From Sminthopsis crassicaudata (lineage: Eukaryota), in the NCBI RefSeq assembly GCF_048593235.1, contig NC_133617.1:524500958-524564957 (forward strand): DNA of 64,000 nt, in the 5' to 3' direction. The translations under genes and the position numbers were made by a program. This document shows, in pieces, positions 1-41,681 of the stretch (position 1 is its first letter; the number at the start of each line of letters is the position of its first letter). The notes under the pieces are model-generated. The model had not been told where the DNA came from. It searched no databases and saw only the letters and a list, made by a program, of their open reading frames with translations.

Positions 1-489
1 TTTATTCTAAAGTGATCACTGATGCCCCCTGTTGAGTTCTACTCGTTTCAATGAGTCAGAGTTCCTCCTTATGGGCACTTTTCTACTAGATTCACAGTCT
101 CCCCTGGTAACCTCATTGCTTCAGAGCCAGCTCAGCCATTTCAGATTAAGTCTAATAGGGTAGAACGGTTAATCTTCTGCCTCATAAAGCAGACTGATAG
201 TATTTAGCCATGATTCTTGACAAACCATCGCCACTAGGTAACAAAAGCCAAGAAGACTTCACTATAAAGATAAAAATTGTTTAAAACTAAGTCTTTATTT
301 TTTTGACCTTATGGATTGGGAATCAGAGTTTTCTGTTAATCATAATTAGTAATTATAATTAATTATCTAGATTATTTATCAGATAATTATCGAGCTTCAG
401 ATTCAGTTTAATACACTTCCAATATCCTTTCTGACCTCACTTCAAATGAATTGGGTCAGAAACAAAGGCAGGCTAAAGAAACAAAATCA

Positions 490-648
490 GGGGCAGCTAG
501 GTGGCGCAGTGGACAGAGCACCAACCCTGAATTCAGGAGGACCCGAGTTCAAATTTGGTCTCAGACACTTAACACTTCCTAGCTGTGTGACCCTGGGCAA
601 GTCACTTAACCCCAGCCTCAGAAAAAGGGGAAAAAAAAAAAAAGGGAC
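490..648 (+). mobile_element. Young marsupial CORE-SINE (WSINE1-like) with A-tail
   Basis: GGGGCAGCTAGGTGGCGCAGTGG head, GAGTTCAAAT B-box, CTGTGTGACCCTGGGCAAGTCACTTAA core and poly(A). Candidate TSD ACAAAATC at 481-488 and 649-656. Confidence 0.85.
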
Positions 649-832: not shown

Positions 833-930
833 TATATGTTTGTGTGTGTATACACACATATATATACATGTGTGTTTATACACATATATGTATATATTAT
901 ATATGTATATTTACATACATATATATATAA
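833..930. repeat. Mixed (TA)n/(TG)n/(CA)n low-complexity tract
   Basis: Alternating TA/TG/CA dinucleotides read directly. Confidence 0.8.
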
Positions 931-1079
931 CAAAAATTTTTTTAAAAGCATAGTTGAGTTCATCTGGACTGGCAGAGGGTAAAGGTTACCCGAATTCTCA
1001 GAATCAGAGGTATGAATAGCAAAGACTTGAAGAATCTGGGTGCTTAGCCAGCAGTCTCAGTTTCCTCTTTCACTTTCAG

Positions 1080-1543
1080 GATTCTTCACAAAGCGCATGT
1101 TTGCTTCTGTAAAGACTCTTCCTACAATGATGTGGAAACGCCTCTCAACTAAGAAAAATACAATCTTGGATAATCTCAAAGAAACTTTGAAAAGCCCAGC
1201 AAAGAGTCAAGTTTTAAAAAACTTTGAGGAAGAGATTCAGAAGAAAGTCAAGGATTTCCAGGATTCCTATAAAAAGCGTTTCTGTGGGCATACTACTGCC
1301 CTGGGTGGACTTGTGGGGGCTGGAATTTTGGCATTGGCTGGTGGTATAGTGGGAGTTGGTGTGGCAGCCAGTGTTTTGAGTGTGGAGGCTGCAGCTGTGG
1401 CCACAGGAGCCACTGTAGGTGCCACAGTGGCTGGAGGTGGCATAGGGGCTGGCATTGGGGCTGCTGTGGGTAAGGCCGAGGGTAGGGGAATAGCTCCTGA
1501 AGAGGAAGAGAAAGATCTTCTTCTCAAGGATGATGATGAATGA
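1080..1543 (+). CDS. Terminal coding exon of an RNF112 (neurolastin/ZNF179)-like GBP/atlastin-family GTPase; upstream exons lie outside the window
   Basis: Pyrimidine tract plus CAG acceptor at 1077-1079, phase 1. Translation ..FFTKRMFASVKTLPTMM...DSYKKRFCGHTTALGGLVGAGILALAGGIVGVGVAA...GGGIGAGIGAAVG...EEEEKDLLLKDDDE* aligns with the recalled RNF112 C-terminus (ATKRIFSALRVLPDTM...DSYTMRFCGHLAAVGGAVGAGLMGLAGG...GGGVGAGLAATVG...REPLLQEE). Stop TGA at 1541-1543. Confidence 0.85.
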
Positions 1544-2861
1544 ACCCTGAAAACCAGATAGAAGAAAGGAGGGAGAGAGAGCGAGCAATGCAGTATCTTG
1601 TTTAATAGAATTAGGGAAATGGGATGGTGTCTAAGGTACTTTTGGGTATTTGAATCAGCAAATAAGAAGTGGACCCAGTTTTAATGACATAGCAGAAGGA
1701 AGCAGTGCTTAGGCCACATAAGATAAGATAGTTTTAGGGCCCATTTCATGGGCCTGCGTGGTCTGTCACTGATTTTATGACTTCTAGATTTGGTCTTCCT
1801 TGGTCTCCCCTCCTATTATTTACTGATAATTGATCCTTCCTCCTCCAAACTCAGGAGACGAGTTCACCTCTCCTCAGAAACTGACCACAGAACATTGTCC
1901 TGTATCAACTTGACTCCCTGAGGCCAGATAGGTCTTGACTGAAACAGGAATGTATGAATGGTCCACCTGACATCCAGCTGGATGAGCTTGGTCTGAGCTG
2001 AATGATTCCTAAAAGTACAAGATAGAGACTAGCCCCCAAATCCCAGGGAAATTTACTGATCACCATTAGCCTAGATCAGATAAAATCCCCAATCTAAATT
2101 TCATTGCTGAGGGATCAGGGAATCTATAGCATTTAGCTCACTGAAGAGTGAATGAAACCTACAATGGACTAAAGTGGGATGTCTATTTAAGAGAGAGGAA
2201 AGACAAAAATGATGGGCCAAATTATAGAGAGAGGGTGCCTCCTCCTACATAGTAACTGCCAGAGGACCATTCCAGCTCCTTCTCCTTAGCATTAAAGTAG
2301 CACATAGGGAGGCTAAAATCCTTGGTTTCAAATCCCATCTTTGTCATTAATCAACTGTGTGACTTTGAACAAAGCTCTTTATTTTTCTTAAATGACAAAT
2401 GAGGATCCTTCTCTTATCTGCTTCACAAGACTATTGTAAAGAACAAATATGAAAGAGCTTTATAAACTGTAGCATTCTAAGGAAGTGTCAAATCCACTTT
2501 GGTGGATTTTTCAGGTTGGGGTTAATTCAACTAGGAACAATAGCTATTGGCCGGTATTAGAGATCAAAGAATAATGGACTGAGTTTTGATCTGCAAGGAA
2601 TTGATAAGTAATTTGTGTGTTAAATATAAATAGAAACAAAATGATACAGTAGGGGGAAAAGATGACTTTGGATTCAAGAGATCTGAGATCAAATTCCACT
2701 TCTGATACTTATCTGTAATTTTAGCAAGAGTTATTTGACTTCTCTAAATTTTCTTAATAGTAAAATTAAGAGATTGGGATAGACGGCTTTCTAAGATTCC
2801 TTCCAACTCTAGATCTTTTATTCTATATTCAACATTGAACTGGATGTCTATGATATGAATG

Positions 2862-41170: not shown

Positions 41171-41521
41171 ACTGAGGTATTAAGTTTCCTGAAATCCTTG
41201 TTCCCTTACTTAAATCAGAGATCTATTATGATGTGAACTATCTTCCCGAGTCAAGAAGAAGCCCATCTGACTATTATGAGATAAAGCCAATTCCCATACT
41301 ATCCGGTCTGTATAGGATGGGATCTTTATCAACCTCTATTATCTATTCTCCCAATCTATTTGCTTGTTTTTCTATACTTGCTACTACTTCCTTTTCCCCT
41401 CTTTTACTCCTGTCTACCACATATTTCAAGCGACAAGAGTTGTTTACTGTTTGTACACTAGAGAAAAGAGAATGTGTGTGTGTGTGTGTGTGTGTGTGAC
41501 TCAGAAATAATACCATGGGGA

Positions 41522-41681
41522 GGGGGCAGCTAAGTGGTGCAGTGGATAGAGCACCAGTCCTGGAGTCAGGAGGAACCGAGTTCAAATGTGATCTCAGACA
41601 CTTAACACTTCCTAGCTGTGTGATCCTGGGCAAGTCACTTAATCCCAATTGCCTCAGCAAAAAAAAGAAAAGAAAAAGAAA
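41522..41681 (+). mobile_element. WSINE1-like SINE next to a (TG)n tract
   Basis: GGGGGCAGCTAAGTGGTGCAGTGG...CCCAATTGCCTCAGC plus A-rich tail; (TG)n at about 41473-41498. Confidence 0.85.

What the first reader, a model, noticed from the sequence alone, without database searches (positions are those of the whole stretch)
1080..1543. RNF112/neurolastin-like membrane GTPase gene next to AHSP, outside the canonical RNF112 neighbourhood
Seen: an intact terminal exon with a good acceptor, an RFCGH motif, a long Gly/Ala zipper hydrophobic segment and an acidic tail. Known: human RNF112 lies at 17p11.2 near MFAP4/SLC47A1, not in the AHSP-RUSF1-SLC5A2 block, and I know of no such gene beside human AHSP. 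Inference: this is a divergent paralogue retained or expanded in marsupials, or a relocated gene. It could be an uncharacterised dynamin/atlastin/GBP-like membrane-remodelling or innate-immune GTPase. The helical part is clearly diverged from RNF112 while the membrane anchor is kept.
Basis: partly seen in the sequence, partly recalled or inferred. Interest (0 to 1): 0.8.

Follow-up and report, generated by a model that had tools for sequence, protein, structure and literature searches.

The report
RNF112 last exon; AHSP's parent gene
The stretch is the last exon of the fat-tailed dunnart's already annotated RNF112 (neurolastin) gene, not a new GTPase, and its neighbour AHSP, the red-cell chaperone of alpha-globin, looks like an old truncated copy of this gene's last two exons.

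Summary
The open reading frame, RFCGH motif, Gly/Ala hydrophobic hairpin and acidic tail are real. The peptide is 100% identical to residues 465-617 of NCBI's "RING finger protein 112 [Sminthopsis crassicaudata]" (617 aa, RING plus GBP-type GTPase). In a 38-protein tree, marsupial, eutherian and monotreme RNF112 form one mammalian clade. So this is the marsupial counterpart of RNF112, not an old paralogue or a new immune GTPase.

But the dunnart has lost one base at about 1088, so that acceptor now reads into a stop at 1110-1112. NCBI's model keeps the frame with a weak acceptor at 1050-51. I could not check which site is used.

The location differs from the lizard, where a fibrinogen-domain, MFAP4-like gene follows RNF112. 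Here AHSP lies 11.4 kb downstream on the opposite strand.

Unexpected result: AHSP aligns end to end with RNF112's three-helix middle domain. A profile scores 26.2 bits, above all 2,000 shuffles. Pfam's AHSP model hits 19 of 37 middle-domain units. Both have the same 25-codon exon and the same phase-0 intron. AHSP structures rank just after RNF112 crystals. AHSP is probably a truncated duplicate of RNF112's last two exons. I found no paper saying so. The scan had not noted this on other DNA.

The parts
1052..1543 (+). Last coding exon of dunnart RNF112 as in NCBI's model (acceptor AG 1050-51; stop TGA 1541-1543)
   Evidence: P0053 reads ...FVEEQ|QSQFPLSLSGFFTKRMF...; tblastn of P0053 on L001; window position = L001 position minus 16346
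1078..1079 (+). Conserved (ancestral) splice acceptor AG. An exon starting at 1080 in phase 0 reads DSSQSACLLL then a stop.
   Evidence: Same site in devil DNA. 17/20 pyrimidines upstream. Other marsupials, eutherians and echidna read D/N-x-x-TK directly after the intron.
1087..1088 (+). Site of the dunnart-specific one-base deletion (TTCC to TTC)
   Evidence: blastn alignment with two devil assemblies; protein alignment
1110..1112 (+). TAA stop reached if the conserved acceptor is used
   Evidence: Read directly from the sequence; donor phase from L001 15993
1088..1291 (+). Codes helices 2-3 of the three-helix middle domain, ending in RFCGH (residues 467-534)
   Evidence: Profile A1 on the six-frame translation, E 3e-23. 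AF2 model of the devil domain, pLDDT 91. Matches Xenopus RNF112 crystals at Z 12.4-13.0.
1292..1471 (+). Gly/Ala-rich hydrophobic hairpin, two segments around a conserved Glu (residues 535-594): the membrane anchor
   Evidence: Hydropathy, and 62% identity to orang-utan; alignment. The RNF112 structure paper describes a C-terminal hydrophobic region.
1472..1540 (+). Acidic tail with a conserved E-x-x-x-L-L motif (residues 595-617)
   Evidence: Alignment across mammals. Reading the motif as an acidic dileucine sorting signal is my inference.
1544..1900 (+). 3' untranslated region, at least this far. Candidate poly(A) signals are ATTAAA at 2291 and AATAAA at 2862.
   Evidence: Word shares in RNA runs; motif scan. 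The end of the transcript was not determined.
13353..13431 (-). AHSP first coding exon. Inferred acceptor AG 13433-32, ATG 13427-25, 25 codons, ends ...LLDQQ|gt in phase 0.
   Evidence: Aligns without gaps to RNF112's 25-codon penultimate exon.
12980..13183 (-). AHSP last exon (67 codons plus stop)
   Evidence: Pfam AHSP 108.5 bits, E 2.3e-31. It is the only other hit of the RNF112 middle-domain profile in the window, E 1.5e-5.

Best explanation
Window 1052/1080-1543 is the last coding exon of RNF112 (neurolastin) of the fat-tailed dunnart. RNF112 is a RING E3 ligase fused to a GBP/atlastin-type GTPase. The exon supplies helices 2-3 of the three-helix middle domain, the hydrophobic hairpin that anchors the protein in membranes, and an acidic tail with a dileucine motif.

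By analogy with the solved Xenopus protein, GTP hydrolysis releases the middle domain from the GTPase domain and drives dimerisation. Because the protein is membrane-anchored, this can tether or remodel membranes. That step is inferred, not shown here.

The gene is the marsupial counterpart of eutherian RNF112, not an ancient paralogue. It lies tail to tail with AHSP. AHSP is itself an old truncated copy of RNF112's last two coding exons: the 25-codon exon plus the helical part of the last exon, cut off before the anchor. That would make the adjacency a parent-daughter relation rather than a coincidence.

In the dunnart alone, a one-base deletion just inside the exon breaks the frame from the conserved acceptor. 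The annotated full-length protein needs a weak acceptor 28 bases upstream, which puts 12 new residues in place of DSS in the loop after helix 1.
For: Identity of the gene. 100% match to P0053 residues 465-617. P0053 has RING and GBP domains. Its 11-12 exons map on L001 with no gaps.

Family tree. Mammals form one clade at 100/100. Marsupial, eutherian and monotreme subclades are each 100/100, and sauropsids are sister.

Constraint. Dunnart versus devil over 453 nt gives dN/dS 0.43, 93.6% identity and no indel. The flanking intron is 84% identical and the UTR 89%, with 5 gaps each.

Expression. RNA-run word shares fit exon plus UTR without the intron.

AHSP link.
- The profile of 37 middle-domain units hits human AHSP chains in PDB at E 0.00085-0.0014, directly after Xenopus RNF112.
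- It aligns to the dunnart AHSP end to end at 26.2 bits. The best of 2,000 shuffles scored 18.5.
- The signal survives without turtle repeats (21.6 versus a shuffle maximum of 14.8) and with mammals only (15.7; 1 of 3,000 shuffles reached it).
- hhalign gives 80% probability, E 1.5e-5.
- Pfam AHSP is the commonest family among the units, 19 of 37, with the next family at 5.
- AHSP M1-Q25 corresponds to RNF112's 75-nt penultimate exon, and the following intron is phase 0 in both. The lizard and echidna genes have the same intron.
- AHSP chains score Z 11.6-12.1, TM 0.72/0.79, ranking just below the RNF112 crystals.
- The opossum has an annotated 176-aa gene made of exactly these two exons, starting at a Met in the first codon of the 25-codon exon.
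Against: - Which acceptor is used is therefore unknown.
- The word shares fit a start near 1080 slightly better than 1052: 0.82 observed against 0.815 and 0.844 expected, and 0.27 observed against 0.30 and 0.35. That would mean a truncated product.
- A second, MFAP4-linked RNF112 in marsupials was not excluded. Only the best 120 of 238 hits were listed, and 50% clustering could hide one.
- The branching order of the three mammalian groups is unresolved. A duplication in the stem mammal followed by reciprocal loss is therefore not excluded.
- The PDB-wide E-value for AHSP is borderline. An unrelated TetR regulator scored the same, 0.00094.
- Z of about 12 is common among helical bundles (note).
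- Only one AHSP sequence of my own, plus the human PDB chains, was available.
- The AHSP adjacency was seen only in the dunnart. In the devil and echidna the 10 kb flanks did not reach any AHSP.
Confidence: 0.8

Rival explanations
1. Hidden paralogy. A stem-mammal duplication gave one RNF112 copy beside MFAP4 and another beside RUSF1, and the second spawned AHSP. Eutherians kept the first copy and marsupials kept the second. On this view the dunnart gene is a paralogue of human RNF112, though not a divergent extra copy.
For: The lizard RNF112 is followed 3.3 kb downstream by a convergent 260-aa fibrinogen-domain gene, which I read as MFAP4-like. That matches the human neighbourhood known from the human genome map, so that position looks old. 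The three mammalian subclades form an unresolved trichotomy with long stems of 0.34-0.66. Local duplication is frequent in this family: 3 tandem copies in echidna, at least 5 genes in opossum and a tandem pair in Gracilinanus.
Against: No marsupial protein of the eutherian type appeared among the hits. NCBI names the gene plainly 'RING finger protein 112' in six marsupials. This history needs two independent losses.
Confidence: 0.3
2. In the dunnart the gene is freshly disabled. Splicing still uses the strong conserved acceptor, so the mRNA encodes a 463-residue protein (RING, GTPase, helix 1) without helices 2-3 or the membrane anchor. The long ORF is a not-yet-decayed remnant that the annotation pipeline rescued with a cryptic site.
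For: The one-base deletion is absent from the devil and from all other marsupial proteins. The conserved acceptor is much stronger, 17/20 versus 9/20 pyrimidines, and an AG lies 4 bases before the upstream site. RNA word shares fit a start at 1080 slightly better. A stop in the last exon would not trigger nonsense-mediated decay, by the established rule, so expression would persist.
Against: The 453 nt after the deletion show no indel or stop and dN/dS 0.43, while the flanks carry several indels. A further 2-base difference in the 28-nt stretch makes the upstream site exactly in frame. NCBI's model is not flagged low quality.
Confidence: 0.3
3. The one-base deletion is an assembly error or a rare allele. 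The real dunnart gene reads DSS-TK from the conserved acceptor, like every other marsupial.
For: The missing base lies in a CC dinucleotide. Everything downstream looks like a constrained exon.
Against: The assembly is a recent chromosome-scale one (GCA_048593235.1), and errors in 2-base runs are rare in such assemblies (general knowledge). The RNA runs hold the exon's sampled words at the expected share, although only about one sampled word would cover the site.
Confidence: 0.12
4. The AHSP resemblance is convergence. Both are elongated antiparallel three-helix bundles of similar length and composition, and the adjacency is chance.
For: Helical bundles reach Z of about 12 without being related (note). 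One shuffle in 2,000 reached 18.5 bits, and an unrelated TetR protein matched the PDB E-value.
Against: Convergence does not produce the same 25-codon exon, the same phase-0 intron after ...Q, and a start codon at the first codon of that exon. The match holds in both search directions and in independent subsets. AHSP is the only other hit in the 64 kb window.
Confidence: 0.1

Closest known systems
Eutherian RNF112 / neurolastin (ZNF179)
   Same: Same architecture: RING, GBP-type GTPase, three-helix middle domain, RFCGH, Gly/Ala hydrophobic hairpin, acidic tail with PLL/LL. Same exon-intron layout at the 3' end. One mammalian clade.
   Different: Only 43-47% identity overall. It lies beside AHSP-RUSF1-SLC5A2 instead of MFAP4/SLC47A1. 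The dunnart copy has a one-base deletion and, in the annotated model, a 12-residue replacement after helix 1.
Xenopus laevis RNF112 crystal structures (9jju, 9jjv, 9jjw, 9jjx; PMC12012479)
   Same: The middle domain encoded partly by this exon superposes at Z 12.4-13.0, rmsd 1.6-2.1. The profile hits it at E 1.3e-7.
   Different: The crystals lack the RING, the hydrophobic region and the tail, which are what most of this exon encodes.
AHSP (alpha-haemoglobin stabilising protein; 1Y01, 1Z8U, 1W09, 3OVU)
   Same: A three-helix bundle of the same length, aligned end to end with the RNF112 middle domain. Same 25-codon exon and same phase-0 intron. Structural rank directly after RNF112 itself.
   Different: No RING, GTPase or anchor. 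It is a soluble erythroid chaperone, by established knowledge. It ends at a stop where RNF112 continues into RFCGH and the hairpin. It has a 6-residue shorter loop 1 and lies on the opposite strand.
Atlastins (ATL1) and GBPs
   Same: GBP-type GTPase domain (Pfam PF02263) followed by a helical middle domain. The ATL1 middle domain matches at Z 10-11.7. Atlastin also has a two-segment membrane hairpin, by established knowledge.
   Different: No RING. No sequence-level match of the exon to either family. No evidence here for interferon-type immune function.
Opossum 'RING finger protein 112-like' XP_007498030.2 (P0036, 176 aa)
   Same: An annotated two-exon gene made of RNF112's 25-codon exon (starting with Met) plus the last exon. 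This is the layout proposed for the ancestor of AHSP.
   Different: It still carries the hydrophobic hairpin and tail. No DNA or expression data could be fetched.

Membership tests
RNF112 / neurolastin | N-terminal C3HC4 RING finger | tested here: met
   Pfam zf-C3HC4, E 2.4e-8, on P0053 residues 34-77. The exon is identical to the C-terminus of P0053.
RNF112 / neurolastin | GBP/atlastin-type large GTPase domain | tested here: met
   Pfam GBP PF02263, E 1.6e-30, residues 140-388 of P0053
RNF112 / neurolastin | Three-helix middle domain followed by RFCGH, a hydrophobic hairpin and an acidic tail | tested here: met
   Alignment; AF2 model and match to RNF112 crystals; hydropathy
RNF112 / neurolastin | Groups with RNF112 of other mammals in a family tree | tested here: met
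   Mammalian clade 100/100. The order of the three mammalian groups is unresolved.
RNF112 / neurolastin | Conserved neighbourhood (MFAP4, SLC47A1) | tested here: not met
   No MFAP4-like sequence in the window or in 10 kb upstream. The downstream neighbours are AHSP, SLC5A2-type, TGFB1I1-type and ARMC5 genes. The lizard does have a fibrinogen-domain neighbour. Synteny is not a defining feature of the protein family, so this does not remove membership.
RNF112 / neurolastin | Open frame reachable by splicing from the preceding exon | tested here: inconclusive
   Broken from the conserved acceptor and intact from AG 1050-51. No junction reads could be laid.
RNF112 / neurolastin | GTPase and E3 ligase activity, endosomal membrane localisation | not testable with these tools
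   Known for mouse, human and Xenopus proteins only (PMC12012479)
AHSP as a derivative of the RNF112 middle-domain module | Significant sequence similarity in both search directions | tested here: met
AHSP as a derivative of the RNF112 middle-domain module | Shared exon size, intron position and phase | tested here: met
   75-nt phase-0/0 exon at L001 15919-15993 and in the lizard at L007 27321-27395. AHSP codons 1-25 at 13427-13353, with the intron after Q in phase 0.
AHSP as a derivative of the RNF112 middle-domain module | Same fold with residue-level correspondence | tested here: met
   AHSP residues 1-91 match model residues 7-101, Z 11.6-12.1, TM 0.64-0.79. This is weak evidence on its own for helical bundles.
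AHSP as a derivative of the RNF112 middle-domain module | Parent and daughter adjacent in lineages other than the dunnart | tested here: inconclusive
   The 10 kb flanks in devil and echidna hold no AHSP. In the dunnart the gap is 11.4 kb, so the flanks were too short.
   The C-terminus is an RNF112-type hairpin and not a GBP helical domain. Expression context is unknown because the run labels are coded.

The most novel reading that the evidence does not exclude
AHSP, the erythroid chaperone that protects free alpha-globin, was born at this locus by an inverted partial duplication of the last two coding exons of RNF112. A stop before the membrane hairpin then turned a dynamin-superfamily lever domain into a soluble three-helix chaperone. 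Marsupials still keep parent and daughter side by side, while eutherians retain RNF112 only at the MFAP4 locus.
Probability: 0.5. Interest if true: 0.75.

Novelty: new variant of a known kind. Interest (0 to 1): 0.6.

Why it matters
On its own the exon is ordinary. It belongs to an annotated orthologue of a known brain GTPase and E3 ligase.

Two things make it worth more.

First, it gives a concrete and testable origin for AHSP, a medically studied gene that modifies thalassaemia. I could find no published ancestry for it: no paper in the library holds both AHSP and RNF112 or ZNF179. The proposal is exon-level descent from the middle domain of the neighbouring RNF112. This suggests experiments, such as testing whether the RNF112 middle domain binds alpha-globin and finding which changes created the binding. 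It is also a clean example of a new soluble protein arising from part of a membrane enzyme.

Second, the dunnart copy is a natural case of a frameshift next to a splice site. It has either been rescued by a cryptic acceptor or has just truncated the protein before its anchor. That bears on how far annotated "intact" models can be trusted.

Tried and rejected
- Searching the 153-aa fragment in the word-indexed protein database found nothing, because its length filter excludes full-length relatives. A second attempt with P0053:440-617, meant to catch transcript-derived dunnart peptides across the junction, returned only wombat proteins.
- Pfam, PDB sequence search and the ESM Atlas on the fragment alone gave only noise.
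No junctions were seen.
- I first read the Pfam AHSP hit in turtle 'RNF112' models as gene models fused with a neighbouring AHSP. I rejected that: the hit lies inside their repeated middle-domain units, and the genomic locus shows tandem two-exon modules.
- A tblastx search for an MFAP4-like gene found nothing in the window or in the flanks of the dunnart, devil, echidna and guinea-pig loci.
- A search for AHSP in the 10 kb flanks of the devil and echidna RNF112 genes found nothing.
- Opossum and Gracilinanus DNA could not be fetched because the files were too large. The coelacanth protein was not on record.
- The scan's earlier notes hold nothing on RNF112, MFAP4 or AHSP.
- A bacterial promoter/terminator scan was irrelevant to this genome.

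Full report
1. What is at 1080-1543

The + strand carries an ORF in frame 1040..1543. Downstream of 1082 it reads FFTKRMF...KKRFCGH. A 60-residue Gly/Ala-rich hydrophobic stretch follows, split by one Glu, and then an acidic tail ending ...EEEEKDLLLKDDDE. Alone, the 153-residue peptide matches no Pfam family or solved structure.

An exhaustive HMMER search of 1.84 billion representatives gave 32 hits, 13 of them below 1e-10. The full-length hits carry a RING finger and a GBP-type GTPase domain, and the match sits at their C-termini. Their sources name them RING finger protein 112 or 112-like, from wombat, opossum, echidna, guinea pig, bat, gecko, turtle and frog.

A second search, seeded with the opossum protein, returned P0053, NCBI's 'RING finger protein 112 [Sminthopsis crassicaudata]' of 617 aa. 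Residues 465-617 of P0053 are 100% identical to the window peptide. The window is therefore from the fat-tailed dunnart, and the exon belongs to a gene that is already annotated.

2. The gene and the splice problem

The genomic locus L001 (GCA_048593235.1) holds the gene at 10001-17889. Window position equals L001 position minus 16346. All coding exons map, and there is no assembly gap.

The penultimate coding exon is 75 nt (L001 15919-15993). It is phase 0 at both ends and finishes ...TTT GTT GAA GAA CAG|gtaagc.

In every other marsupial, in eutherians and in echidna, the protein continues D/N-x-x-T-K directly after this Q. Devil DNA reads tttcag|GAT TCT TCC ACA AAG. The dunnart reads tttcag|GATTCTTC-ACAAAG, so one base is missing (two devil assemblies). 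From the conserved acceptor (AG 1078-79) the dunnart frame is therefore DSSQSACLLL followed by TAA at 1110-1112.

NCBI's model instead starts the exon at 1052 (AG 1050-51). This gives QSQFPLSLSGFF in place of DSS and then rejoins the conserved frame. That upstream site is weak. It has 9 of 20 pyrimidines upstream against 17 of 20 for the conserved site, and another AG lies four bases before it. A further 2-base difference from the devil within the 28-nt stretch makes the upstream site exactly in frame.

The 453 nt downstream of the deletion look constrained. There are 29 differences from the devil, no indel, dN 0.051 and dS 0.119, a ratio of 0.43. The adjoining intron is 84% identical and the 3' UTR 89%, with five gaps each.

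Indirectly, seven RNA-type runs from three studies hold 0.82 of the sampled words of 900-1900 and 0.27 of 680-1280. A transcript holding only 1080 onward predicts 0.815 and 0.30. One starting at 1052 predicts 0.844 and 0.35. Two very large runs also hold intron words. So the exon is transcribed and its upstream intron is removed. The numbers lean slightly towards the conserved acceptor, but the difference is about three sampled words and is not decisive.

Three readings remain open: rescue by the cryptic acceptor, a recently truncated protein without helices 2-3 and the anchor, or an assembly error.

3. Orthologue or paralogue

I built a maximum-likelihood tree of 38 full-length proteins: 11 marsupial, 7 eutherian, 3 echidna, 3 lizard, 11 turtle, 2 frog and 1 coelacanth. 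It follows the species tree. All mammals form one clade (100/100). Marsupial, eutherian and monotreme subclades each have 100/100 support, their order is unresolved, and sauropsids are sister.

All marsupial RNF112-type proteins retrieved belong to the marsupial subclade. None of eutherian type was seen among the listed hits. NCBI uses the plain name RNF112 for this gene in six marsupials. The gene is thus the marsupial representative of RNF112, not an ancient extra paralogue.

A stem-mammal duplication with reciprocal loss cannot be excluded, for two reasons. The three mammalian groups are unresolved, and I could not search marsupial genomes directly.

4. Neighbourhood

Downstream in the window lie AHSP (minus strand, 12980-13431), then genes with SSF (SLC5A2-type), LIM (TGFB1I1-type) and ARMC5 domains, and a 12-13-finger ZNF gene. 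No gene was called in the 10 kb upstream of RNF112.

In the lizard Elgaria, RNF112 is followed 3.3 kb downstream by a convergent 260-aa fibrinogen-domain gene, which I read as MFAP4-like. This agrees with the human RNF112-MFAP4 neighbourhood known from the human map, so that arrangement appears old. Nothing MFAP4-like is in the window or in the flanks of the dunnart, devil, echidna or guinea-pig genes.

5. AHSP is related to this gene

Three turtle 'RNF112' models carry a Pfam AHSP hit. In Chelonia the hit lies inside a five-fold repeat of the C-terminal helical unit, not in a fused AHSP gene. The locus shows tandem two-exon modules.

I aligned 37 such units from marsupials, eutherians, echidna, lizards, turtles and coelacanth, without the hydrophobic part (A1). 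The evidence is as follows.

- Searched against all PDB sequences, the A1 profile finds Xenopus RNF112 first (E 1.3e-7). Seven distinct AHSP sequences come next (E 0.00085-0.0014). One unrelated TetR protein scores alongside them.
- Against the dunnart AHSP assembled from the window, the profile aligns positions 9-98 to residues 3-86 and scores 26.2 bits. The best of 2,000 shuffles scored 18.5.
- The signal holds in subsets: 21.6 bits without the turtle repeats (best shuffle 14.8), 25.9 with sauropsids only (best 11.5), 15.7 with mammals only (1 of 3,000 shuffles reached it), and 10.2 with the coelacanth sequence alone.
- hhalign against AHSP's last exon gives 80% probability, E 1.5e-5.
- In the reverse direction, Pfam's AHSP model is the family matched by the most units, 19 of 37. 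The next family matches 5.
- In a six-frame scan of the window, the profile hits only the RNF112 exon and the AHSP exon.

Gene structure agrees. AHSP's Met1-Gln25 occupies exactly the positions of RNF112's 25-codon exon. The intron that follows is phase 0 in both, after ...EEQ in RNF112 and ...DQQ in AHSP. A likely AHSP acceptor lies 4 nt before the ATG. Lizard and echidna RNF112 have the same intron, and a eutherian transcript with that intron retained shows it too.

Structure agrees as well. An AlphaFold model of the devil domain (pLDDT 91, three helices) matches the RNF112 crystals at Z 12.4-13.0. AHSP chains come immediately after at Z 11.6-12.1 (TM up to 0.72/0.79), level with the atlastin-1 middle domain. 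For helical bundles this is only supportive.

The opossum has an annotated 176-aa gene consisting of just these two exons. It starts at a Met that is the first codon of the 25-codon exon. This shows how such a fragment can become a gene.

I conclude, with about 85% confidence, that AHSP descends from a partial duplicate of RNF112's last two coding exons, cut short before the hairpin. RNF112's middle domain is shared with atlastins and is present in coelacanth and frogs, so the direction is RNF112 to AHSP.

That the duplication happened at this locus, with marsupials preserving the original pair, is the simplest reading of the adjacency. But the old RNF112-MFAP4 linkage means at least one further move or loss is needed. 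I put this at about 50%.

I found no paper that mentions AHSP together with RNF112 or ZNF179. A review of AHSP does not discuss its ancestry.

6. How the product should work

This is by analogy with Xenopus RNF112 (PMC12012479). In the empty state the three-helix middle domain docks on the GTPase domain. [quoted passage not shown] When the protein is anchored in a membrane this remodels or fuses membranes. The RING adds ubiquitin ligase activity.

The exon studied here supplies two of the three helices, the anchor and the tail. The conserved acidic E-x-x-x-L-L in the tail fits an endosomal sorting signal; that is my inference. None of this was tested for the marsupial protein. If the conserved acceptor is used in the dunnart, all of these parts are missing.

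7. Verdict

The gene itself is known. What appears new is its parent-daughter relation with AHSP and the dunnart-specific frameshift at the splice site.

Noticed in passing
L001 15604-15816 (minus strand; about 530-740 nt upstream of window position 1) and devil L002 15562-15762: An inverted copy of about 254 nt of the last exon's 3' part (second hydrophobic segment, tail, stop and start of the UTR). It sits in the intron just before the 25-codon exon, is 86% identical to the exon and has its ORF still open. It is shared by dunnart and devil. It could pair with the exon in the pre-mRNA as a long double-stranded stem.
   Followed up: partly
P0036 (opossum XP_007498030.2; no DNA obtainable): An annotated 176-aa two-exon gene made only of RNF112's 25-codon exon and last exon. 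The opossum has at least five RNF112-like genes on one chromosome, and Gracilinanus has a second copy 7.4 kb downstream in tandem.
   Followed up: partly
L010 21667-27320 and 62528-65020 (green turtle): Tandem arrays of the two-exon middle-domain module inside one 55 kb gene model. Turtles also have proteins made of middle-domain repeats alone, annotated as 'apical junction molecule-like' or 'trichohyalin-like'.
   Followed up: partly
L004, L005, L006 (echidna, three tandem RNF112-like genes about 37 kb apart); positions about 250-680 of each: About 9.5 kb upstream of each copy lies a frameshifted relic of a last exon, with middle-domain and hairpin parts in two frames.
   Followed up: no
window 1050-1079 and devil L002 17052-17083: In the devil, the same upstream AG would add 30 nt in frame with no stop. 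An alternative longer isoform may therefore predate the dunnart deletion.
   Followed up: no
window 487-620: A tRNA-derived marsupial SINE with an A-rich tail, in the last intron. A similar copy lies near 41400-41650. Part of it (570-615) triggered the read-laying filter.
   Followed up: no
window 835-940: A TG/TA-rich simple-sequence tract in the intron about 150 nt upstream of the exon.
   Followed up: no
P0003 (Logan transcript-derived, 239 aa): A eutherian RNF112 transcript that retains the short in-frame intron between the 25-codon exon and the last exon.
   Followed up: no
   Followed up: partly
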